64,000 bases of DNA from Hemiscyllium ocellatum (Eukaryota), in contig NC_083427.1 in the NCBI RefSeq assembly GCF_020745735.1, forward strand, positions 1,333,438 through 1,397,437. The letters are read 5' to 3'. Positions 5,373-60,545 of this stretch are shown here, piece after piece. The position numbers were made by a program, and so were the translations under genes. The number at the start of each line of letters is the position of its first letter. The first letter of the stretch is position 1. The notes under the pieces are model-generated. The model had not been told where the DNA came from. It ran no database searches and saw only the letters and a program-made list of their open reading frames with translations.

Positions 5373-6021
5373 CATTTTTTGATACCGTGGAGAATTTACT
5401 TGAGTAAGAAACAATTTTGTTCCCTCAAGTACTTGAACAAGGCCTCCAGATTCCTTTTGTCTCTGGTGTGTAAACGCACTTCTGTTGACTTGTCAAAACC
5501 ACAATGATGTCAAAATGAAAAGATTTCTCAAAATTATTTCCTGATTATTACATGAGATCAAATTGTCTCGTTAGCAACAAATATAAAACAGATTATCGGA
5601 AATAAATAATTAATATTTCAATACTTGGTTTTTGTTTTAACATAGAAAGAAATGCTTTAAGAAGTAGATGGGACAAGGTTTAGGGAGCCGTATACAGAAC
5701 GTCGAGTCTCGGAGGCTGAAAGTACATTGATTAGTTTTTGGACAGTTGAAATGAGGAATTCTTCAGAGGTTAGTGCATCAACACAAATGTCTCACACGAT
5801 TTCAGCTCGAGGAAATGTTAGAGTTAGAGTTGAGTGAAGTAATTGAGAGGTTGAGTAAAAGGAAGAGAATTCTGAAATCGAAGGATTGTTTGACATGACG
5901 AAATTATATCACAAAGCAGAGAGCCGGTCCTGCGTACTTGGCCTGAGATTAAGACATTCGCTGCTGAAAATGTGTTGCTGGTCAAAGCACAGCAGGCCAG
6001 GCAGCATCTCAGGAATAGAGA

Positions 6022-6057
6022 ATTCGACGTTTCGAGCATAAGCCCTTCATCAGGAAT
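6022..6057 (-). ncRNA. Minimal hammerhead ribozyme motif, antisense twin in the left arm
   Basis: Exact reverse complement of 8026-8061. Confidence 0.75.
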
Positions 6058-8025
6058 GAGAGAGAGTAGCCAAGCAGGCTAAGATAAAAGGTAGGGAGGA
6101 GGGACTTGGGGGAGTGGCGATGGAGGTGGGATAGGTGGAAGGAGGTCAAGGTGAGGGTGATAGGCTGGAGTGGGGTGGGGGCGGAGAGGTCAGGAAGAAG
6201 ATTGCAGGTTAGGAGGGCGGTGCTGAGTTGAGGGAACCGACTGAGACAAGGTGGGTGGAGGGGAAATGAGGAAACTGGAGAAATCTGAATTCATACCTTG
6301 TGGTTCGAGGGTTCCCAGGCGGAAGATGAGGCGCTACTCTTCCAGCCGTCGTGTTGTTATGTTCTGCCGGTGGAGGAGTCCAAGGACCTGCATGTCCTCG
6401 GTGGAGTGGGAGGGAGAGTTAAAGTGTTGAGCCACGGGGTGGTTGGGTTGGTTGGTCCGGGCGGCCCAGAGGTATTCTTTGAAGCGTTCCGTAAGTAAGC
6501 GGCCTGTCTCACCAATATAGAGGAGGCCACATCAGGTGCAGTGGATGCAAGAGATGATGTGTGTGGAGGTACAGGTGAACTTGTGGCGGATATGGAAGGA
6601 TCCCTTGGGGCCTTGGAGGGAAGTGAGTGTGGAGGTGTGGGCGCAAGTTTTACATTTCCTGCGGTTGCAGGGGAAGGTGCCGGGGGTGGAGGCTGGGTTG
6701 GTGGGGGGTGTGGATCTGACGAGGGAGTCACGAAGGGAGTGGTCCTTGCGGAACGCTGATAGGGGAGGGGAGGGAAATATACCCTTGGTGGTGGGGTCCG
6801 TTTGGAGGTGGCGGAAATGACGGCGGATGATACGTTGTATGCGGAGGTTGGTGTGGTGGTAGGTGAGAACCAGTGGGGTTCTGTCTTGGTGGCGGTTGGA
6901 GGAGCGGGGCTCAAGGGCGGAGGAGCGGGAAGTGGAGGAGATGCGGTGGAGGGCATCGTCGATCACGTCTAGGGGGAATCTGCGGTCCTTGAAGAAAGAG
7001 GCCATCTGGGCTGTGCGGTGTTGGAACTGGTCCTCCTGGGAGCAGATGTGGCGGAGACGAAAGAATTGGGAATATGGGATGGCGTTTTTGCAGGGGGCAG
7101 GGTGGGAGGAGGTGTAGTCCAGGTAGCTGTGGGAGTCAGTCGGTTTATAATAGATGTCTGTGTTGAGTCGGTCGCCCGAGATAGAGATGGAAAGGTCTAG
7201 GAAGGGGAGGGAGGAGTCTGAGACAGTCCAGGTGAATTTGAGGTCGGGATGGAAGGTGTTAGTAAAGTTGATGAACTGTTCAACCTCCTCGTGGGAGCAC
7301 GAGGCAGCGCCGATACAGTCATCGATGTAGCGGAGGAAAAGGTGGGGGGTGGTGCCAGTGTAGTTATGGAAGATGGACTGTTCCACATATCCTACGAAGA
7401 GGCAGGCATAGCTGGGGCCCATGCGGGTGCCCATAGCAACTCCTTTAGTTTGGAGGAAGTGGGAGGATTGAAAAGAGAAGTTATTCAGGGTGAGGGCCAG
7501 TTCAGTCAGTCGAAGGAGGGTGTCAGTGGAAGGGTACTGATTGGTGCGGTGGGAAAGGAAGAAGCGGAGGGCTTTGAGTCCTTCGTGATGGGGGATGGAG
7601 GTGTACAGGGACTGGATGTCCATAGTGAAAATAAGGCGTTGGGGACCGGGGAAGCGAAAATCCTGGAGGAGATGGAGGGCGTGGGTGGTGTCCCGAACGT
7701 AGGTGGGGAGTTCTTGGACTAAAGGGGACAGGACCGTGTCGAGGTATTGGGAGATGAGTTCCACCTGGGAACCCTCCAACCACAAGGTATGAATTCAGAT
7801 TTCTCCAGTTTCCTCATTTCCACACCCCCCACCTTGTCTCAGTCGGTTCCCTCAACTCAGCACCGCCCTCCTAACCTGCAATCTTCTTCCTGACCTCTCC
7901 GCCCCCACCCCACTCCAGCCTATCACCCTCACCTTGACCTCCTTCCACCTATCCCACCTCCATCGCCCCTCCCCCAAGTCCCTCCTCCCTACCTTTTATC
8001 TTAGCCTGCTTGGCTACTCTCTCTC

Positions 8026-8061
8026 ATTCCTGATGAAGGGCTTATGCTCGAAACGTCGAAT
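8026..8061 (+). ncRNA. Minimal type I hammerhead ribozyme motif (PLE terminal repeat)
   Basis: ATTC-CTGATGA-A-GGGC(TTAT)GCTC-GAAA-C-GTC-GAAT: catalytic boxes intact, helix I ATTC/GAAT, 4-bp helix II, palindromic ACGT helix III, GUC cleavage triplet. Confidence 0.75.
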
Positions 8062-8289
8062 TCTCTATTCCTGAGATGCTGCCTGGCCTGCTGTGCTTTG
8101 ACCAGCAACACATTTTCAGCTGTGATCTCCAGCATCTGCAGACCTCATTTTTTACTCTGAGATTAAGACACTGCAGAAGGTGATTAGAAGACCCAAAGTT
8201 AGAAATTGGGAGTTTGGTCAGGGATGCATTTTCTAGATTGTACAAATTTGTCTTCATGTTTGAGCAGTAGATAAGCTCACCGTCAAATC

Positions 8290-9552: not shown

Positions 9553-9873
9553 GCATACAGCCTTCTCCACCAGTCATCAGTCTACACTACTCTGCAACTG
9601 AAGAACAGAGGGCAAACAGATTTCTTCAGCTGATTTGTCTCATCACCGGGTACTATCCTGAAAGAATTGCATTGACCTGGCAGAAGAACGGAAATACCAT
9701 AAGTTCTGGCGTTACAACTACGTCTCCAACGAAAACAGCGACCAATGATTTTAGCTCTACAAGTTTGCTGAAAGTGCCACTGCAGGAATGGAACAGCGGC
9801 TTTGTGTACAGTTGTCAAGTTTCTCATTCTGCTTCCAATAGTAACCAGAGAAAAGAAATTAGTTCAACATCGG
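9553..9873 (+). CDS. IgNAR: IgNAR constant domain C1 exon (321 nt, phase 1-1)
   Basis: Acceptor ttgtaattttag, donor TCG G|gtaaga. Translates (G)IQPSPPVISLHYSATEEQRANRFLQLICLITGYYPERIALTWQKNG...YSCQVSHSASNSNQRKEISSTS: C1-set Ig fold with both Cys and Trp, closely matching shark IgNAR C1 as I recall it. Confidence 0.97.
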
Positions 9874-10984
9874 GTAAGAAAACTAAACAAACTCACAAGC
9901 TCACATTCATTACCATAATCAGTTTTGTCATAAATATTAGACAAGATGGAAAATTATTTTGTTGGTTTATTACTGCGGATGAAGCATTCTTGAATTAGTT
10001 GCAGTGAGTAATATCAATGGGAATTTGTAGTCCAGAGAAATGTTACAGCAAAAATGAGTCAAAATGAACCAGGTACCTAAACCCACTCTTTCAAAAAGAT
10101 AGTTGAGAATAACCTATGAAATTATTTCCCTTTGCTCTGTATAGGTCTGACCAAAATAACCAAAGTTCTTGGAAAAAGACAGAGGAAAAAGACAGATATA
10201 GAGCCATTATGAAGAAAGCAAGTGAATGAGAGAGATTAGTGAGCAAACCTCTTAACTGACAAGTTTAGGCAGAGTTTCTGGATATGCTCGCTATTCAAAA
10301 TTCTTTATACAACGTGGTAGTCCCCCGCTTTTTCTTATTTTCCGAGTCAATTCAGAGTAGCAAAATAAAGCCTTGACACTGCACACACTTCATCACAAAG
10401 GAATCATTTTCAACAATGCGTATTTCTAAAGCTGTGGCTAGTGAGGATTTAGTATTGTCTGTTGCCGATTGTTGCCATGCAATTGTAGAAAGGATGTATT
10501 GGGGGGTTGGGGGGTGGGGGGAGGTGAGAATGTTCAGAGTAGCTTAGGGGAGAGATAAGTTGTCTGGTGGAACAGAGATAGAAATTTGTTATTGGAAGGG
10601 GTGCGACATAAACAACAGGCATGCGCCAATATGTTTATTTGGAACATTTATTACATAGATCATTTTTTAAGCAGGACTTTAAAATACCCATTGGTGATAA
10701 CGATCTCAATGACCTTCTGTGCTTAAAATGCATCGACCATCACAATGTAGTAAATTTTCTCCGTCTCTACCTGTCTACCTTGCTCTACAACTCTCTTTTA
10801 TTCCTGTCAGTTTTTTTCTCACACACAAACAAACCCAGGACACACGAAAGAGAGAGAAAGAGGGAGAGAGACGGTTGCATTTTTCATCCCTTCCTTGTTC
10901 ACTGATTTTGACATTCTTGTTGCGCTCCTGATTACATTATTGGATCACGGAACAGAATCTGAATCTCGGATTTCTCTCTGACAG

Positions 10985-11281
10985 AGATAGCTGTATTATT
11001 AAGGGAGCCATTGGTTGAAGAAATCTGGATCAATAAAAGTGCCATTCTGGTTTGTGAAGTGCTTTCTACAGTTTCCAGTGGGGTAGTTATCTCTTGGATG
11101 GTGGATGGAAAGGTGCGGAATGAAGGCGTTCAAATTGAAGCAGCGAACAGAAACCAATATGTGACAATCAGCCGCTTGACGAGCACCGTGGACGAGTGGC
11201 AGAGTGGGGTGGAATACACATGTTCTGCAAAACAGGATCAATCATCACCCGCAGTATCAAAACGAACAAGAATGGCAAGAG
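10985..11281 (+). CDS. IgNAR: IgNAR C2 exon (297 nt, phase 1-1)
   Basis: Acceptor tctctctgacag, donor AGA G|gttggt. (E)IAVLLREPLVEEIWINKSAILVCEVLS...SWMVDGKVRNEGV...EWQSGVEYTCSAKQDQSSPAVSKRTRMAR. Confidence 0.96.
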
Positions 11282-11361
11282 GTTGGTGACAAGAACAATG
11301 TATTTGTACATGTCATTTAATGAGCGAGGAAATACTAAAAATGTATGTACTTCTATTACAG

Positions 11362-11679
11362 TTAAATCAATGAAGCCATATATCCGTCTCCTGCCTCCAT
11401 CACCAGAAGAAATTCAGAACAGCAGCTCTGCTACTCTCACATGTTTGCTGAGAGGATTCTATCCTGACAAAATAAGCGTTTTCTGGGAGAAAGATGGAGC
11501 TTCTGTCAACGAGAACATCACCAATTTCCCCACTGCTCTGGAACAGGACCTGACCTACAGCGCACGGAGCCTCCTCATTTTACCTGCAGCGGAATGGAAG
11601 AGTGGCGCAAAATACACCTGTACTGCCTCGCATCCACCTTCACAGTCCACTGTGAAAAGGGTCATCAGAAGCCCGAAAG
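11362..11679 (+). CDS. IgNAR: IgNAR C3 exon (318 nt, phase 1-1)
   Basis: Acceptor ttctattacag, donor AAA G|gtaagg. (V)KSMKPYIRLLPPSPEEIQNSSSATLTCLLRGFYPDKISVFWEKDG...EWKSGAKYTCTASHPPSQSTVKRVIRSPK. Confidence 0.97.
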
Positions 11680-12340
11680 GTAAGGACAGTGTTCTAGCAA
11701 CCATGTTCAACATGAACACTTTGTGTTAAATATCAACAGAACATGAAATCTTAACCAAACATTTTAAGGTTCCAGCAATTTTAAAATGCACAAGATCTCT
11801 GGGAATGAAACACCTTTAGCAAACTGCACATGGCTATGAGGTAAACAGCAGAAGCAATAACATCCACAAGCGCATGGTCTCAAGGAGTGTGAAGACTGCT
11901 GATATTAAAAAAAGGAAGGAACCTCTTGTGGCGCATTGCCCTCTTGTGGCATCCTGGACCAAGATGCTTGTGTTTACTTTCCACCTCCTCCAGAGTTGTG
12001 TGTTGAGGTATCTGAACAGGTTGACGAGAAAAATAGGTTAACTAAAAACTTATGTTAAGAGAAAGGGCTGAAACACAAGGTTAATGCTTGAAGGCGTGTT
12101 GCCTTTCGAGAACAATGAAATTTGTTGAGTGGATGATTGTGTCGAAATGATTTTGTGTTTTGCTTGCTTCTGTCACTGCTTCATGCTCCTCCTTTGATAC
12201 CAGCTCGAGCGGTTGCTGACAGTCAACTGAAAGGTACTTAGAAATGCAAACATTTCTCGACGAGTAGAATTCATGCACATGAATTAATGTGTGCATTGGA
12301 AGGATTATATTATTCAGCCCTTTGACCATGGAGAATTAGT

Positions 12341-12661
12341 GGGCGGCACGGTGGCACAGTGGTTAGCACTGCTGCCTCACAGCGCCAGAGACCCGGGTTC
12401 AATTCCCGACTCAGGCGACTGACTGTGTGGAGTTTGCACGTTCTCCCCGTGTCTGCGTGGGTTTCCTCCGGGTGCTCCGGTTTCCTCTCACAGTCCAAAG
12501 ATGTGCGGGTCAGGTGAATTGGCCATGCTAAATTGCCCGTAGGGATAGGTAAGGGGTAATGTAGGGGTATGGGTGGGTTTCGCTTCGGCGGGTCGGTGTG
12601 GACTTGTTGGGCCGAAGGGCCTGTTTCCACACTGTAAGTCTAAGTCTAATCTAATCTAATC
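12341..12661 (+). mobile_element. HE1-like tRNA-derived shark SINE, full length
   Basis: Box A (tggcacagtgg), box B (ggttcaattcc), conserved central domain, CR1-like tail and (CTAAT)n end. Confidence 0.9.
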
Positions 12662-13687
12662 ACATGGAGGACATTGACAATGGATGTTGTAGATTACCGA
12701 TGGACAGAGGTAAGATACAGCCCTGGATTGAGGGTGCCAAGTGGAATTTAATGCGGAAAGCTGTGAGGTGGTTCACTCTGGAAATAGTTAAATGTGTCAA
12801 GAGTACAAGGGGTACATGGTGAGATGTTTGGTGCAGAGAAACCTTCTCTCAAGAAGAAAATTGGTAAGTCGGGATAGTACTGCAATAACAACAAAATAGA
12901 ATTGATTTCGGAAGTCTGAATTGAAAAATAATATTTCGAAGAGGAAGAGCAGGAATGGCAGAATCTATGTAGAGAAAAATAGGTGCAGATGAGCAGAGGG
13001 ATCTCAATGTCCATGTGCAGAGATCTTTGGAAGTTGCCACCCATGTTGATAGAGTTATTAAGAAGAATTAAGCTATTTTAGTTTTGATTGGTAGAGGGAA
13101 TGAGTTTCGGAACCATGAGTTCATATTACCTCTGTGAAAAACTCTGGTGCGGCCACAGTTGAAGTATTGCGTAGAGTTCTCGTCACCACACTATAGGAAG
13201 GATTTGGAAGTTTTGTAAAGGGTTCAAAGGAGATTTACTGGGATGCTGCCTGATACAGAGGCAAGTTCTTATCAGAAATGCTGATGGACGTGAGAATGTT
13301 TTCGTCAGAGTGAAGAAGTTTGGGATGTGACTTCATTGAGATATATAAGATAATCAGAGGCTAAGATAGGGTGGACAATGAGAGCCTTTATCTTCGATTG
13401 GCAATGGATAGCACGCAGGGACATAGCTTTAACTTAAGTGTGATAGACACGGACAGAGGTCTGAGGTAGTTCCTTTATTCACAGAGTAGTAGGAGCATGG
13501 AACGCACTGCCTGCTACAGTAATTGACTCGCAAACTTGAAGGGCATTGACATGGTCATTGGATATGGATATGGACGAGAATGGCATAGGGTAAGTTAGAT
13601 TGGCTTCAGAGTAGTTTTACAGGTCGGGGAAAGATCGAGGGCCGAAAGGCTTGCACTGCGTTGTAATGTTCCATGTTTCATATTCTA
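12662..13687 (+). mobile_element. CR1-type LINE fragment interrupted by a copy of the C4 3' end
   Basis: Colinear with other CR1 copies on both sides of 12838-12981. Confidence 0.88.
12834..12983 (+). repeat. 150-bp copy of 15378-15528 (C4 3' end, donor and intron start)
   Basis: About 7 substitutions and 1 indel by eye. Confidence 0.95.
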
Positions 13688-15086
13688 GATGATTAATTTC
13701 ATTTTGATCAGTATTTTTTTCACAATTCCATTCCCGCCTCGATCATTTAATTGCATGAGCTGAAAGGTTTTGAAAAAGCAAGACTATTTGGATGGAACTG
13801 ATCATGGAACGTAAAATATGAACCACCTATTGAGGAAGAAATGGTAATGGAGCGCAACTGAACTCAGGTCGCGAATCGACAAATTCATGTTAACAGTCTG
13901 CTAGGTTGAACAGAGTCGCAGCGGAATAGATGAACTCAGGACAGCCAGAGGAAAAGCAAGTATTCATACTTAAGAGTTTGGAATGCGAGACAGTAATATT
14001 AATCAACAAGAGAGTAGTTTTTTCAATATTCTCCCTCCCAGACAACCTGACAGAGGCAGTGACGTAACAGAGGAACTGCATAAGCTTTGCAATATGCGCA
14101 CAAAATAAAATTATGCCGTTTGAAGTACAGAATAGACATGAAGCATCATTCCTCACAAGTATTATTGAAACTTTCAGAGATAACCCGTTCTGTGAATTTT
14201 GTAATTGTACGAAAATTTAAGGTAACAATACAAGCAGAACATTCAAGAACCTTCTTTTCATTTGTACTTTACGTCATGCACAAAGAAAGTAACTGTTATT
14301 GTACTAAGAGCAACCATTTTGCCTTTAGCAATCTAGAAGCATGCTTTCCCCTACGTTATGCATTCCTTTAAAATTATCACGATTCTGAACAACTGTTAGT
14401 TTTGGCTATTCCCAACACCAGAGTTGAGAACTGAAAGACATGTGCTCGCAATATTTTAGATTTCCTCACTTAACACTCTACAAAGATGAGTAATATGAAA
14501 AACATCTCTTGAATGTGTCCTTGACTGGAACTGAATCATGCAGCAAGTATCTTTTATTTTCAAATAAAAGCCTGCCTAGGAAATAGGGAGCAAAGTCAGT
14601 TGAAAGGATGCAATCAATAAAATGCAGTTTGATACCAGTTCAATTTCTCCATGAGTTTTTCTGACACAGAGCAAATAATGTAAGCTCATGTACAGGGGAC
14701 ACATATGATATGTGTTTGCTCGTCTGGGACCGGATTCCGATAAATGCAGTTCATGTGGCAGCAACTGTCTTCTGACATTGGTAACTGCAATAGGTGAAAA
14801 TGTGCAGCACTCGAATGGAGACATTAGACCTCAGTATACCCAAGGCAGAGCAGTTTCCAAACTGTTCAAGATTATATCAGAAATATTACTGAAGGCTTAT
14901 CCATAATATTCAGAGTGAATGCAACCAGTACGAAAAGGAAGACACAGCATCTGATTAACTAAGCCTAAACGATCTCAGAAAACAGATAACAGATCGCAGT
15001 AAGTAAAACTATTTGCAACTCTAGTAGTGTTTTGGAATTGATTTCGATATCGCAGCCTGAAAACATGCATTCTTTTCTGTTTCCAG

Positions 15087-15407
15087 GTGATTGCCGTCAG
15101 ACAGATATTGCTGTCCATCTACTGAAACCTCCGTTCGAAGAGATTTGGACACAAAAGACAGCGACCATTGTGTGTGAAATCATTTACAGCAACTTAGAAA
15201 ACATCAACGTTTTCTGGCAGGTGAATGGGGCTGAAAGAACAAAAGGAGTCAAGACAGAAAATCCTGTTTGGAACGGAAGTAAATTCACCATTTTGAGCAA
15301 ACTTAAAGTCATTGCATCAGAGTGGGACAGCGGTGCCGAATATGTTTGCTTGGTAGAAGACAGTGAATTACCAACACCAGAGAAAGCTTCTCTCAAGAAG
15401 AAAATTG
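15087..15407 (+). CDS. IgNAR: IgNAR C4 exon (321 nt, phase 1-1)
   Basis: Acceptor tcttttctgtttccag, donor ATT G|gtaagt. (G)DCRQTDIAVHLLKPPFEEIWTQKTATIVCEII...EWDSGAEYVCLVEDSELPTPEKASLKKKI; includes the extra N-terminal Cys (DCRQ) of the C3-C4 linker. Confidence 0.97.
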
Positions 15408-16204
15408 GTAAGTCGGGATAGTACTGCAATAACAACAAAATGGAATTGATTTCGGAAGTCTGAAATGAAAAAAAAATATTTCGAAGAAACAGAGCAGGAA
15501 TGGCAGAATCTATGTAGAGAAAAATAGGGTTAACGTTTCCAGTCCAGTATGCATCTTCCTAAAAATAGTAATTTACGATATTTTGATATAAGCCTGACTC
15601 ATAAACTAGTTCAATGGAAAAAGAAATCCTGTCAAACCATTAATGCGTTATAGTAAATGGCCCCAAATCAGCAGCAGCAAGTGGCTCACTGGTTGTCACT
15701 GCTGCCTCAGGGCACAGGTTCAATTCCAACTCTGTGGAGAGGGTTCCCAAGTTGACGTGGGCTTCCATTGCGAGCTCCAGTTCTCGTCGAATATGTGCAA
15801 GTTGGATGGATTGGCAATGGGGTACGTGCTTTTGTCGGGAGTGGGTCTTTGAGGGATGCTCTTTGGCGTGTGGGTATGGACTTGTTGGGCCGAATGGTTT
15901 GTTAAAACGCTATGAGGAAATCATGGAAAGTCAATAGCCGTGGCTTCTTCTTTAATGAAAATGAGCGTGAAGAACTGTAAGTGGATGAATCATTTGCACT
16001 CCACGAATAGCAATCTTTACAAAATGTATGATTGGCTCCAAGATTTAAACCAGCAAAGTAGGGGACATGAAATGCTGTAGCATTCAGAAATATTTGCAGT
16101 CTGACAGATACTAAATATTTTATAAACTATATGCATTACTAGCAATGAAATTCTAATACAGATGTAAGATGGTTTCAGCTAAACAAACATCACTCTCTTT
16201 GCAG

Positions 16205-16587
16205 ACGACCAAATGCGTCCGCCTCAGGTTTATCTCATGCAGCCATCAACAGACGAGATTGACGCTGAGAATTCAGCGACCCTTATGTGTCTCGTCACCA
16301 GCTTTTACCCAGCTGAGATCTACATTGGCTGGATGGCTAATGACACCCTTTTGGATACCGGGTACCGAACCCAATTGGATAGCCAGGCGGGGAATGGTTC
16401 CAACTTCGTGACCAGCAGGTTGAGAGTCACAGCGGCGGAATGGAACAATGACATCACTTACTCCTGCTTAGTGGGGCACCCATCCCTCAGCCGGGAGTTA
16501 ATCAGGAGTACAAATAAATCTCATGGTAAACCGACAGCTGTCAATGTTTCAGTCGTACTAAGCGATATTGTTAAAACCTGCACATAA
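16205..16587 (+). CDS. IgNAR: IgNAR C5 exon with contiguous secretory tailpiece (C5 16205-16525; tail 16526-16587)
   Basis: Acceptor ctctctttgcag. (D)DQMRPPQVYLMQPSTDEIDAENSATLMCLV...TYSCLVGHPSLSRELIRSTNKSH, then GKPTAVNVSVVLSDIVKTCT-stop (NVS sequon, penultimate Cys). Internal donor CAT G|GTAAAC at 16525/16526 for the membrane form. Confidence 0.97.
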
Positions 16588-19599: not shown

Positions 19600-20655
19600 G
19601 GATCAAGAATTGGCGAGCTGAAAGAAGAAGGTGGTGCTTGATGGGAAATATTCTTCGTGGAGTTCAGTTACTAGTGATGTACTGCAAGGATATGTTTGGG
19701 GTCCACTACAGTTTGTCATTCTTATAAATAACCTAGGTGCAGCATAGAAGGATGGCTTAGGAAATTTGTGGCTGACACTAAGGTCGGTAGATTTGTGGAT
19801 TGTGCCAAAGGATCTTGTGGATTACAGAGAGACATAGATAAACTATAGAGCTATGCTCAGATGCGACAAATGGAGTTTAATGCGGAAAGGTGTGATGTAA
19901 TTGACTTTGGAAAGAATAGCAGGAATAAAGAGCACTGGGCTAATAGTAAGATTCTTGGTTGTGGAGAGGAACAGAGAGATCTCAGTGTCCATGTGCACAG
20001 ATGCTTGAAAGTTGCCTCCCATGTTGATAGGGTTGTTAATAAGGCATACAGTGTGTTAGCTTTATTTGTTAGAGGGATGGAGTTTCGGAGTCATACGGTC
20101 ATGCTGCAGCTTTGCAAAACTCTGGTGTGGCCGCACTTGGAGTATTTTGTACAGTTCTAGTCACCGCATTATAGGAAGGATGACGAAGATTTGGGAAGGG
20201 TTCAGACGATATTTACTCTGACTTTGCCCAGTATGAAAATAAGACCTTATGAGCAAAGTCTGACCGACTTGAGGGTGTTTTCAAGAGAGAGAAGAAGGTT
20301 GGAGGTGACTTAATTGATACATACAAGATAATCAGATAGTTAGATAAGGTGGACAGTGAGATCATTTTACCTCGGATAGCAATGGCTCACTCAAGAGGAC
20401 ATAGCTTTAAATTGCAGAATGATAGTTTCTGGACACTTGTCTGAGGTAGTTGCTTTACTCAAAAAATAATAGGGGATTGAACGCACTGCCTGCAAGAATA
20501 GCAGACTCGCCAACTTAATGACACTTAAATGGTCATTGGCTCGGCATATGGACGAGAATTGAATAATGTTGTTTAAATATACTTCCGATTGATTTCACAG
20601 GGCGTTGCTACATCGATGGCCTTGTACTGCACTATAATCTTCTATGTTCTGTGTT
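19600..20655 (+). mobile_element. CR1-type LINE fragment
   Basis: ORF 19861-20160 QMEFNAERC..EEQRDLSVHVH..KTLVWPHLEYFVQF; tail ttctatgttct. Confidence 0.9.
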
Positions 20656-22640: not shown

Positions 22641-22994
22641 TGTCAATAATAATTCCAATCAAATCAAATTTGTTAGAAAGCAATGAACAGCAACTGTTTT
22701 AAGGAGTTCAATCGAAGTAAATTTGAATGCAAATGCACGTATTGCTTCATATTTGTAGTATTGCTAAGATTGCACCGAGACATAGTGCAAAATCTGTTAA
22801 CATGCAGGATTCTTCCAGATCTTTACAGAATAGGTGCAGAAATAGTTTTAAAAAATACATTATAAAACCAGATTCTAGTCCACGAATGTATCAAATATCA
22901 CACAATTGCCAGTGCCTTGATATTACAGAAAATTTACTGGGATTTCTTTTGTCGACGTGACCAATTTTTCAAAAAAATTCTCCACTAATTGTAG

Positions 22995-23675: not shown

Positions 23676-23761
23676 TAACATGCAGGATTCTTCCAGATCT
23701 TTACAGGATAGGTGCAGAAATAGTTTTAAAAAATATATTATAAAACCAGATTCTAGTCCAC
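23676..23761 (+). repeat. 86-bp direct copy of 22798-22883
   Basis: 84/86 identical. Confidence 0.95.
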
Positions 23762-25679: not shown

Positions 25680-26600
25680 CCAAAAGAGAGAAAATGCTGG
25701 AAAATCTCAGCAAATTTGGCAGCATCTGGAAGGAGAGAAAAGAGCTGACGTTTCGGGTCTAAAAGATCCTTTGTCAAAGCTAAAGAAAGGGAGAAATAAG
25801 GAGGTATTTATACTAGGATGAGAGAAGGTGCCATTTATACATGGCTCCAGAAGCAAATGTAGCAGTAAAGAGGTGATAATGACAGTACAGAGAGATGTTA
25901 TAGGTTTATTAGAAGCTGAAGCTTCGATGTGACAAAATATGTGGGGGTTTGGTTGGGGGAAGGGGGCGAGATGGAGGGCGGGAATTGGTGAAGCAGAGGC
26001 AAAATGGGAAACGAGGGGAAGGGTAGCAAAGGGGGAGCAGGAGAGGTAAAAGGTGATGAAAGAGTGGGGAGCGAGAGAAAGACAGACAATTAAAAAATAA
26101 GAGGCACAGAACAGTGAAAAAAATAGAAAATCAAGATAAATGAAACAAATGAAATGAAATTAAGGAGCAAAATGAAAACAGAGGGGTCGAGATGGGGTAA
26201 TCATCTGATGTTGAATTCAATGTTGAGACCGGCAGGCTGTAATGTGCCTAGTCGGAAGATGAGCTGTTGTTCCTTCAGTTTGCATTGTGCTTCACTGGAA
26301 CATTGCAGCAGGCCAAGGAAAGACATGTGGGCATGGGAGCAAGATTATGTGTTAAAGTGGCAAACCACGGGAAGATCCGGGAACTGATTGCGTACAGATA
26401 TGGCTCCATAAGCAAAGGTAGCAATAAAGAGGTGATAATGACTGTGTAAATACCTCTCTATTTCTCCCTTTTTTTTTAGCTTCGAGAAAGGGTCAGTTCG
26501 GCTCGAAACGTCAGCTCTTTTCTCTCCTTACAGATGCTGCCAGACTTGTTGGGAATGTGTAGTATTTTCTCTTTTTTGGTTTCAGATTTCAGCATCCGCA
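25680..26600 (-). mobile_element. PLE 3'-end remnant with inverted terminal arms
   Basis: Arms 25680-25813 / 26444-26579 each carry a decayed GAAACGTC hammerhead; C-terminal ORF remnant (ORF 26154-26387 is its antisense). Confidence 0.7.
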
Positions 26601-58667: not shown

Positions 58668-59369
58668 ATCCTCCTTCGTCTCAGAATGGCTATGAATTGA
58701 ATTGTACTATGGCATACGATACAAATGAAGTAAGAGTCATGAATTGCAGCCCTTCTTCTTGTTTTAAGTATCACGAACACTTTGGTTACTTCATTCTATT
58801 TATTAAGAAATGGAATATGTGGAAATGCTCTTTAATACTATACTCTCTGAGGTTCCATCGAAACTTCGTTAATGCACCTTTTAAGATCAGCATGATCATT
58901 GACCCATATATCTCTGTTGTCCATCTAATGAGGATTTGACAATATCCAAAACATTCATACTATGTCATCCTGTCTTATGTAAACTTTTGGCCTTGTTCAT
59001 TGTAAATATGTTTGTACTTGCCGAATTAAAAATAGACATAGCTAATGACAATTTATGTAGTTATAAGTGGTTAAATAAGTTACTTTTCGATGTTAATAAT
59101 TGTTGAAGTTGTTTTGTGAAATTATATTTTTCACTATCCCTAACCTGACCCTGTTGTTTAGGAGCGCGCAGTCAAAACTTGTAAACTTGCACAAGTCAAA
59201 AGATGAAAGTGGATAACCTAGCCACAACACATCATTGCTCTCAAGGTAAACTTCTGGGATATTATAAGGAGCAAAGCAAAAGAGCAGAAAGGTCAACCTT
59301 CCACCAATGGTCTTTATCATACTCCTCTTGATGAACTCCATGACTTACTTTCTAACTCCAACTCTTATA

Positions 59370-60545
59370 AGGTTGGTTTTTAGTTATGGTTTGCGAATTG
59401 TGGAATGCCTGAGGAGTCCTTGCTGGGTCGATTGCTGTTTATTATTTATGTGAATGCTTTGGATGAGAATGTACATGATTAGCATGCTTGCAGACAAAAT
59501 TAAAATAGGACGTACTGTGTGCAGTGAGAAAGTTTATCTGAAATTGCAGCAGGACCTTGATCAACTGGGGAAGTGGTTTGAGGAATGACACATCGGGGTT
59601 GATAGAGATATGTATGAGGGGCTGCATTTCGAAATGCCAAATTGAGGTCAGAGTTTCATTAGTTTCTTCTATTTTGCTTTATTCCTTCTTATGTCCCAGA
59701 ACTTTACCTTGAGAGCTATGATGTGTTGTGGCTAGGTTATGCACTTCCATCTTTTAATTTGTGCAAGGTTAAGAATTTTGACTGCACACACCAAATCAAC
59801 AGGATCAGGGTCTTAAAGAGTGATGAGGAACCGCGGGATCTTGGAGTTCATATCCACGGCTTTCCGAAAGTAGAGTCACAGGTAGGCAGGGCAGGGAAGA
59901 AGGTTTTTGGCACACTGGCCTTCATCAGTCAGGGCATTGATAATAGAATTTGGGACGTTATGTTGCGGTTTTACAGGACGTCGATGAGACAGCACTTGGA
60001 GTATTCTGTTCAGTTTTGGTCACCGAGATCTCGGAAGGATGTTACTAAACTGGAAATAGTGGAAAAGAATTTTAAAAGATTGCTGCCAGGACTCAAAGGT
60101 CTGTTTCATTTGGGAGAGCTTGGACAATGTAGGAGATTTTTTTATTTTGTAGCGGAGGAGACTGAGGCAAGGAAATTATAGAAGGGTGTCAGATCATGTG
60201 AGGCAGGGTAGAAAGTGAATGCATGCAGTCTTTTTACCAGGATTATGGGATCAAGAACTAGAGTGTATCAGTTTAAGGTGAGAGTGGAAAGAATGAAAGG
60301 GATCCTGAGAGTGAACTTTTTTTACACGGACGGTGTTACTGAAATGGATGAGCTGCCAGCAGAAGTATTTGAGGCATGAACATTAACAATTTTTAGAAGG
60401 ACTTTTGACAAACACATGGATAGGAAACTTCTTAAGAGATAAAGGCCAAGTGCAGAAAATGGGATTAACATGGGGGGACATTTTGGCCGTGTGGACGCGT
60501 TTGGGCCAAAGAACGTATCTTCGTCTGTAGGACTCTATGACTCTG
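59370..60545 (+). mobile_element. CR1-type LINE fragment interrupted by inverted local copy 59663-59809
   Basis: EEPRDLGVHIH..RQHLEYSVQFWSP; tail ctctatgactct. Confidence 0.88.
59663..59809 (-). repeat. 147-bp inverted copy of 59144-59290
   Basis: Ungapped, 124/147 identical by my count. Confidence 0.9.

What the first reader, a model, noticed from the sequence alone, without database searches (positions are those of the whole stretch)
12830..12989. C4 exon end and splice donor copied 2.5 kb upstream into a CR1 LINE, with TSD and microhomology
Seen: 12838-12981 interrupts a colinear CR1 RT fragment and is flanked by the 8-bp direct repeat GGTGCAGA (12830-12837, 12982-12989). It matches 15378-15528 (last 30 nt of C4 plus intron) at ~95%, with junction microhomologies CAGA and AGG to the source. 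It is unspliced, has no poly(A), and keeps TTG|GTAAGT at 12863/12864. Known: polymerase theta/synthesis-dependent end joining and RT template switching both give such templated insertions. Inference: germline capture of a piece of the Ig gene itself at a break in the locus.
Basis: partly seen in the sequence, partly recalled or inferred. Interest (0 to 1): 0.75.

Follow-up and report, generated by a model that had tools for sequence, protein, structure and literature searches.

The report
Repair scar copying antibody-exon end
A 144-base piece of a shark antibody (IgNAR) gene, the end of its fourth constant exon plus the start of the next intron, was copied 2.5 kb upstream into an old jumping-gene remnant when a DNA break was patched; this kind of repair scar is already documented in vertebrates, and nothing here shows that it has a function.

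Summary
Window 12838-12981 (144 nt) copies 15382-15526: the last 26 nt of IgNAR exon C4, its GTAAGT donor and 119 nt of intron. The two differ by 7 substitutions and 1 indel. No other copy lies in the 64 kb.

The copy sits in the C3-C4 intron, inside a decayed CR1-like LINE fragment, between two copies of GGTGCAGA. Removing the insert and one repeat restores an unbroken LINE alignment and reading frame, so the 8-bp duplication is real. Microhomology is CAGA (4 nt) on the left and GG (2 nt, not AGG) on the right.

Contigs of three samples from two studies hold the junction stretch as fully as its surroundings, which argues against a one-off mis-assembly. No reads could be laid.

Every feature fits the "repair-mediated duplications" of Pace et al. 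2009: insertions in transposons, donor under 5 kb away, median 147 bp, microhomology with or without target duplication, no poly(A), exon-intron pieces sometimes copied. I read it as a DNA-templated repair scar in the germline. The break-repair versus fork-switching sub-pathway is unresolved. Nothing links it to antibody-specific machinery.

The scan has noted many similar local templated insertions elsewhere in this genome, and a second lies in this window. Verdict: new member of a known kind, low to moderate interest.

The parts
12830..12837 (+). Left copy of the 8-bp target duplication GGTGCAGA. Its last 4 nt (CAGA, 12834-12837) are the microhomology to the donor at 15378-15381.
12838..12981 (+). 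Inserted copy (acceptor), 144 nt: 26 nt of the C4 exon end, the copied splice donor GTAAGT (12864-12869), and 112 nt of further intron sequence (118 nt in all).
12982..12989 (+). Right copy of the 8-bp target duplication. Its first 2 nt (GG) are the microhomology to the donor at 15527-15528.
15378..15528 (+). Donor segment: 15382-15526 was copied, and 15378-15381 and 15527-15528 are the microhomologies. It spans the C4 exon end (to 15407) and the start of the C4-C5 intron.
15087..15407 (+). IgNAR constant exon C4 (321 nt, phase 1 in and out). About 83% identical in protein to the solved nurse shark IgNAR C4 domain.
11680..15086 (+). C3-C4 intron of the IgNAR gene, which holds the LINE fragment and the insertion. 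The C3 donor is AAAG|GTAAGG at 11679/11680.
12662..13677 (+). Old, 5'-truncated CR1-like LINE fragment (3' part of ORF2), interrupted at 12838-12989 by the insert plus the duplicated 8 bp. It has 6 stop codons in about 130 codons.

Best explanation
This is a repair-mediated duplication: a scar of DNA-templated repair in the germline. Inferred steps follow. A break with ends staggered by 8 bp arose in a dead CR1-like LINE inside the IgNAR C3-C4 intron. The left 3' end (...GGTGCAGA-3') paired through its last four bases (CAGA) with the same chromosome or its sister 2.5 kb downstream. It was extended for about 145 nt across the C4 exon-intron boundary and then released. The new 3' end (..ATAGG) paired through GG with the 3' end of the other break end. 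Fill-in and ligation left the 144-nt copy between two copies of GGTGCAGA. What is shown: the copy, its donor, the duplication, the microhomologies, and the age difference from the LINE. What is inferred: the break, its stagger and the polymerase. A stalled replication fork that switched template and returned 8 nt behind its point of departure would leave the same product. The copy is most likely inert intron sequence carrying a decoy splice donor. Its position in an antibody gene is most likely incidental.
For: The copy matches the donor at 95% and is found nowhere else in 64 kb. The 8-bp duplication is proven by LINE colinearity and a restored frame. The microhomologies of 4 and 2 nt lie exactly at the 3' termini of the two ends. 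The donor is 2,544 bp away in cis and in the same orientation. There is no poly(A) or T-rich target, and the segment is unspliced. The insert differs from the donor by JC 0.05 in total, whereas the LINE fragment has 6 stops in about 130 codons and is only 71-72% identical to other copies, so the event is much later than the LINE insertion. Every feature lies within the published class. There, 824 human cases have a donor under 5 kb away (66% under 3 kb) and a median length of 147 bp. Microhomology is 2-9 nt and target duplication 4-21 nt. 'MH+TSD' accounts for 3 of 39 proximal cases, 0 of 39 have poly(A), and partial exon/intron donors are recorded. The junction stretch is held at 0.66-0.69 of sampled words by runs of 3 samples in 2 studies. 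That equals the background for the region, and at most 0.39 is possible without insertion-specific words.
Against: No empty site was seen in a relative or a paralogous cluster. Genome-wide copy number of the intronic part is unknown. Most published proximal cases show deletions or filler rather than a clean duplication. The sequence alone cannot separate a DNA template from a nascent-RNA template, or break repair from fork switching.
Confidence: 0.78

Rival explanations
1. The copy was made from an RNA template. A fragment of unspliced IgNAR pre-mRNA was reverse transcribed at a nicked target, either by a LINE enzyme (target-primed reverse transcription) or during RNA-templated break repair using the nascent transcript in cis.
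For: A target duplication and microhomology at both junctions are also what target-primed reverse transcription of a non-polyadenylated template would leave. The copy has the same orientation as the gene, and the exon-intron span is compatible with pre-mRNA.
Against: There is no poly(A) or A-rich 3' end used as a primer site. The target is not a TT|AAAA-type site. The copied piece is internal to an intron, with no natural RNA 3' end at 15528. A trans-acting retrocopy landing within 2.5 kb of its own source in a multi-gigabase genome is roughly a one-in-a-million event. In the published survey, none of 39 proximal duplications carried a poly(A), against 59% of distant ones. CR1-type enzymes are thought to need their own 3' UTR (own knowledge). 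The cis nascent-RNA version needs IgNAR transcription in germ cells, for which there is no evidence.
Confidence: 0.08
2. The CR1 reverse transcriptase switched template while this LINE copy was being inserted. The patch would then be as old as the LINE, and the 8-bp repeat would be a re-copy made on return to the LINE RNA.
For: A second local patch (59663-59809) lies in another CR1 about 18 nt from the equivalent ORF2 position, which could hint at a pause site in CR1 RNA.
Against: The insert is 95% identical to its donor, while the surrounding LINE carries 6 stops in about 130 codons and is 71-72% identical to its relatives. That makes the patch several-fold younger than the LINE. The second patch is 84% identical to its donor and inverted, so the two events differ in age and geometry.
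Confidence: 0.04
3. This is the footprint of a cut-and-paste transposon. A hAT-type element made the 8-bp duplication, later excised, and the gap was filled with nearby DNA. Alternatively, the 144 nt is itself a small mobile element.
For: An 8-bp duplication is the hAT length. Both repeat copies are intact, as in excision footprints with filler DNA (own knowledge).
Against: The insert has no terminal inverted repeats. The duplication GGTGCAGA does not fit the hAT target pattern nTnnnnAn (own knowledge). There is no further copy in 64 kb of repeat-rich DNA. Part of the insert is conserved coding sequence of C4, with KAS in the donor and in nurse shark. Published repair duplications show target duplications of 4-21 nt, so 8 is not diagnostic.
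Confidence: 0.05
4. It is an assembly artefact or a collapsed or chimeric join, not a real allele.
For: No reads could be laid. One of the holder samples may be the source of the assembly.
Against: Contigs of 8 runs from 3 samples in 2 studies hold 19-20 of 29 sampled words of 12780-13040. That is the same share as for the surrounding 5.4 kb, and at most 39% of the words could be held without the insertion. An artefact would not create a clean 8-bp duplication, microhomologies and 5% divergence from the donor.
Confidence: 0.03

Closest known systems
[quoted passage not shown]
   Same: The insertion exceeds 50 bp and colinearly interrupts a transposable element. It has a single donor on the same chromosome under 5 kb away (here 2,544 bp). 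Its length of 144 bp compares with a median of 147 bp. It has microhomology plus a target duplication, both within the published ranges, and no poly(A). [quoted passage not shown]
   Different: The host is a shark, whereas the survey covered mammals, chicken and zebrafish. The clean 'MH+TSD' pattern without deletion or filler was a minority there (3 of 39). No cross-species empty site was available here. This window seems to hold several such events, which would be far denser than the 0.08-0.65 per Mb of TE DNA reported (not properly measured).
Microhomology-mediated break-induced replication / fork stalling and template switching (MMBIR/FoSTeS) templated insertions
   Same: Templated insertion is started and ended at microhomologies of 2-4 nt. 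A return switch behind the point of departure would explain the 8-bp repeat. A cluster of three adjacent substitutions in the copy fits error-prone synthesis (PMC8421209 abstract).
   Different: There is no accompanying larger rearrangement, and a single switch out and back cannot be told from break repair by sequence.
Polymerase-theta end-joining templated insertions
   Same: Microhomology-primed copying of nearby DNA into a repair junction.
   Different: Those inserts are typically a few to some tens of nucleotides, copied from the immediate vicinity of the junction (own knowledge). Here 144 nt were copied from 2.5 kb away, and target bases were duplicated rather than deleted.
Class 1 / class 2 templated sequence insertion polymorphisms of the human genome (PMC5110952)
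   Same: Short pieces of genomic sequence are inserted elsewhere, some with target duplications (abstract).
   Different: Those are templated from distant regions and are thought to be largely RNA-derived, and class 1 shows LINE-1 hallmarks. Here the donor is adjacent and unspliced, and no poly(A) or LINE-1 site is present.

Membership tests
Repair-mediated duplication (Pace et al. 2009) | Insertion of at least 50 bp that interrupts an otherwise colinear transposable element | tested here: met
   Removing 12838-12989 gives one continuous alignment to two other CR1-like copies and a colinear reading frame.
Repair-mediated duplication (Pace et al. 2009) | Inserted sequence present at only one other place (a single donor) | tested here: inconclusive
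   There is only one other copy in the 64-kb window. Genome-wide copy number could not be tested. Paralogous IgNAR clusters are expected to carry the homologous C4 end.
Repair-mediated duplication (Pace et al. 2009) | Donor on the same chromosome within 5 kb | tested here: met
   The offset is 2,544 bp, in direct orientation.
Repair-mediated duplication (Pace et al. 2009) | No poly(A)/poly(T) tract at either end of the insertion | tested here: met
   The ends read GAAACC... and ...GAAAAATA, both continuous with the donor sequence.
Repair-mediated duplication (Pace et al. 2009) | Breakpoint signature of imperfect repair (microhomology, filler, deletion and/or target duplication) | tested here: met
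   Microhomologies are CAGA (4 nt) and GG (2 nt), and the target duplication is 8 bp. The published ranges are 2-9 nt and 4-21 nt.
Repair-mediated duplication (Pace et al. 2009) | Empty pre-insertion site in a related species or copy | not testable with these tools
Only the TE-colinearity substitute, which the authors also used, was applied.
LINE-mediated retrocopy (target-primed reverse transcription) | 3' poly(A) or the LINE's own 3' tail, an endonuclease-type target site, and a processed template | tested here: not met
   There is no poly(A). The target is TTT|GGTGCAGA. The segment is unspliced and internal to the transcript. Only the target duplication is shared.
hAT-type transposon or its excision footprint | Terminal inverted repeats, 8-bp duplication fitting nTnnnnAn, and multiple copies | tested here: not met
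   The 8-bp length is met. There are no inverted termini, the duplication does not fit the pattern, and no further copies exist in the window.
RAG-mediated event at an Ig locus | RSS heptamer or nonamer at the break, and a duplication of about 5 bp for transposition | tested here: not met
   There is no CACAGTG-like heptamer within about 100 bp of 12830-12989 (read), and the duplication is 8 bp.

The most novel reading that the evidence does not exclude
The repair scar has created a usable 27-nt in-frame micro-exon. The junction supplies an AG (12835-12836) and the copy supplies the C4 donor (12864). Inclusion of 12837-12863 between C3 and C4 would keep phase 1 and add EKPSLKKKI to the C3-C4 linker of IgNAR. 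That would be a new antibody-hinge variant born from a repair-mediated duplication. The evidence does not exclude it, but the acceptor is poor: 7 of 17 pyrimidines upstream, against 14 of 17 for the real C4 acceptor. No RNA could be examined.
Probability: 0.05. Interest if true: 0.6.

Novelty: new member of a known kind. Interest (0 to 1): 0.25.

Why it matters
As a single event it matters little. It is a clean, well-resolved example in a cartilaginous fish of a repair process already shown to duplicate exon and splice-site pieces in other vertebrates. Two things could make it useful. First, its presence or absence is a simple marker for ordering the duplications of the IgNAR clusters and for dating them against related species. 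Second, this window holds at least one more such patch and perhaps three more. The scan has also noted many elsewhere in the genome. If that density is real, this shark lineage may use or fix such error-prone repair far more often than the vertebrates surveyed so far, which a genome-wide count could test.

Tried and rejected
- **Reads.** They were included only in closed, local self-comparisons of the window file in scripts.
- **Independent contigs.** The look-up of encoding contigs with the minus-strand ORF that spans the whole insert (12748-13044) and with the C5 ORF found nothing on record, so no independent contigs were fetched.
- **Transposon reading.** Rejected: no inverted termini, single donor, part of the insert is conserved coding sequence.
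- **LINE-1-type retrocopy.** Rejected: no poly(A), wrong target, cis location.
- **RAG or AID involvement.** No RSS-like motif. A WGCW motif in the target is too common to count.
- **CR1 assignment.** Pfam gave no domain for this part of ORF2, and the protein atlas gave only chordate hypothetical, RT and jockey-type clusters. The CR1 assignment therefore rests on the ..LVRPHLEYCVQFWSP.. / ..RRRLRGDLI.. motifs that I know from CR1 elements.
- **Paralogous clusters.** Comparison with the other IgNAR clusters, said by scan notes to lie 0.49 and 1.0 Mb downstream, was not possible because only the window is readable.

Full report
**What is there**

The window carries one IgNAR heavy-chain cluster. 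Pfam finds C1-set domains in the ORFs over C1 (ORF 9672-9998), C2 (ORF 11011-11289), C3 (exon ends 11679), C4 (15087-15407) and C5 with a secretory tail (ORF 16213-16587). The C4 translation matches the solved nurse shark IgNAR C4 domain at E = 1.5e-50 and about 83% identity. The animal is therefore a shark, but not the nurse shark. Scan notes place the V-D-J part of the cluster just upstream of the window and mention bamboo shark. I did not verify the species.

**The observation**

- GGTGCAGA occurs at 12830-12837 and again at 12982-12989.
- The 144 nt between the two copies align to 15382-15526 with 7 substitutions and a one-base indel (JC distance 0.050).
- With the shared junction bases, the match is 12834-12983 against 15378-15528 (E = 6e-64).
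- A sensitive self-search finds no third copy in 64 kb.
- The donor spans the end of exon C4 and the start of the C4-C5 intron, and the copy keeps TTG|GTAAGT at 12863/12864.
- There is no poly(A), and the piece is unspliced.

**The 8-bp repeat is a true target duplication**

The flanks belong to a 5'-truncated CR1-like LINE fragment (about 12662-13677). When the insert and one repeat copy are removed, the sequence gives a single continuous alignment across the junction to two other copies in the window (72% over 860 columns and 71% over 866). The ORF2 frame then reads straight through as ..FGADEQRDLNVHVQRSLEV.., parallel to ..GCGEEQRDLSVHVHRCLKV.. in the copy near 19861. The ancestral element therefore had the octamer once.

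This part of ORF2 lies just downstream of the Pfam RVT_1 core. The CR1 label rests on motifs that I know from CR1 elements, and on jockey-type and RT neighbours in the protein atlas.

**Junctions**

- On the left, target and donor share CAGA (4 nt).
- On the right they share GG (2 nt).
- Both microhomologies lie exactly at what would be the 3' termini of two ends staggered by 8 bp: ...GGTGCAGA-3' on the top strand, and ...CC-3' on the bottom strand.

**Relative age**

The copy and donor differ by 5% in total. Three of the seven substitutions are adjacent (GGA against AAC) and may be one event. In the exon part the donor keeps the Ala codon, as in nurse shark KAS, and the copy has changed it.

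The LINE around the copy has 6 stop codons in about 130 codons and is only 71-72% identical to its relatives. With about 4% of random substitutions creating stops (own estimate), 6 stops imply well over 10% decay. The patch is therefore several-fold younger than the LINE. This speaks against template switching by the LINE's own reverse transcriptase at the time of insertion.

**Is it an assembly artefact?**

No reads could be laid.

As a substitute I asked which public runs hold 12780-13040. Eight runs from three samples in two studies of the same organism hold 0.66-0.69 of the 29 sampled words. That is the same share those data sets hold of the surrounding 5.4 kb (0.67-0.73). Only 39% of the 31-mers of this stretch lie wholly in the flanks or are shared with the donor, so insertion-specific words must be present. 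One sample may be the source of the assembly, but the others are independent. This is indirect evidence and does not replace spanning reads.

**Mechanism**

The product is what a microhomology-primed, DNA-templated copying step would leave:

1. The left 3' end pairs through CAGA 2.5 kb downstream, on the same chromatid or its sister.
2. It is extended by about 145 nt and released.
3. It pairs through GG with the other end.
4. Both staggered ends are kept, which gives the 8-bp duplication.

A replication fork that switched template and came back 8 nt behind its point of departure would give the same sequence, so I cannot separate the two.

An RNA template would also fit the junctions. It is disfavoured because there is no poly(A) and no suitable target site, and the 3' boundary is internal to an intron. 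The strongest point is that the donor lies 2.5 kb away in cis. A trans-acting retrocopy would land there only about once in a million insertions.

A hAT-type footprint is not supported apart from the length of the duplication. No RSS-like sequence is near, so nothing points to RAG.

**Comparison with what is known**

Pace, Sen, Batzer and Feschotte (2009, PMC2671141) searched vertebrate genomes for exactly this configuration: insertions of at least 50 bp that interrupt a transposable element and have one other copy. Their results:

| Feature | Published survey | This case |
|---|---|---|
| Donor distance | 824 of 1,136 human cases under 5 kb; 66% under 3 kb | 2,544 bp |
| Length of proximal cases | median 147 bp | 144 bp |
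| Microhomology | 2-9 nt | 4 nt and 2 nt |
| Target duplication | 4-21 nt; 'MH+TSD' in 3 of 39 proximal cases | 8 bp |
| Poly(A) | 0 of 39 proximal; 59% of distant | none |
| Donor content | partial exon/intron pieces and splice sites recorded | exon end plus intron with donor site |

They also found such events in chicken and zebrafish, and attributed them to synthesis-dependent strand annealing. Every tested defining feature is met here. The single-donor criterion is met only within the window, and the cross-species empty site was not testable. A search for the term found no report from cartilaginous fish. I therefore file this as a new member of a known kind.

**Function**

None is shown. 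The copy is a sense-oriented decoy donor in a 3.4-kb intron.

An earlier scan note (s1-191661) points out that the junction AG and the copied donor delimit a 27-nt in-frame exon. The arithmetic is right: phase 1 is kept and the peptide would be EKPSLKKKI. The acceptor has a poor pyrimidine tract, 7 of 17 against 14 of 17 for the real C4 acceptor, and no RNA could be checked.

**Context**

The same window holds a 147-bp inverted patch (59663-59809, copied from 59144-59290, 84%) in another CR1, about 18 nt from the equivalent ORF2 position. It also holds two more small local duplications. Scan notes list many local templated insertions elsewhere in this genome, one of them followed up as a repair scar. 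If these counts hold, the density here far exceeds the 0.08-0.65 per Mb of TE DNA reported for other vertebrates. That, rather than this single event, is the lead worth measuring.

Noticed in passing
window 59663-59809 and 59144-59290: A second local templated patch: 147 bp inside another CR1-like copy is an inverted copy (84%) of DNA about 370 bp upstream. Its insertion point lies about 18 nt from the ORF2 position equivalent to the 12838 event (just before the ..QRDLGV.. motif). This may be coincidence (roughly 4% for two random points in about 1 kb) or a weak spot in CR1 sequence.
   Followed up: partly
window 22798-22883 and 23676-23761: An 86-bp direct duplication, 98% identical, 878 bp apart, in sequence that is otherwise unique in the window. 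Which copy is the acceptor, and whether it has a target duplication, was not resolved.
   Followed up: partly
window 25680-25886 and 26400-26579: A composite local duplication: 46 bp direct (91%) next to 134-136 bp inverted (82%), about 560-760 bp apart. It looks like an older, two-piece local rearrangement or templated patch.
   Followed up: no
window 5963-6324 and 7759-8120, with ORF 6532-7785 (-): 362-bp inverted repeats, 98% identical, bracket a 417-aa reverse-transcriptase ORF (Pfam RVT_1, E = 2e-08) in the J-C1 intron. This layout, together with the scan's note of hammerhead-like motifs at 8026-8061, suggests a Penelope-like or similar retroelement.
   Followed up: no
window 12837-12863: A potential 27-nt in-frame micro-exon is bounded by the junction AG and the copied C4 donor, and would add EKPSLKKKI between C3 and C4. 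The acceptor tract is weak, and no RNA evidence could be obtained.
   Followed up: partly
window 12944-12946 versus 15489-15491: Three adjacent substitutions (GGA in the copy, AAC in the donor) turn the copy into a perfect tandem GAAGAG GAAGAG. This is probably one multi-base event, possibly made by error-prone synthesis at the time of copying.
   Followed up: no
window 12335-12660: A member of a repeat family with four other copies in the window (89-92% identical) ends in a (TCTAA)n-like tail and abuts the 5' end of the CR1 fragment.
   Followed up: no
whole window: There are two to four small local templated duplications in 64 kb. That would be tens of times denser than the repair-mediated duplication densities published for other vertebrates (0.08-0.65 per Mb of TE DNA). 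It was not measured properly here.
   Followed up: partly
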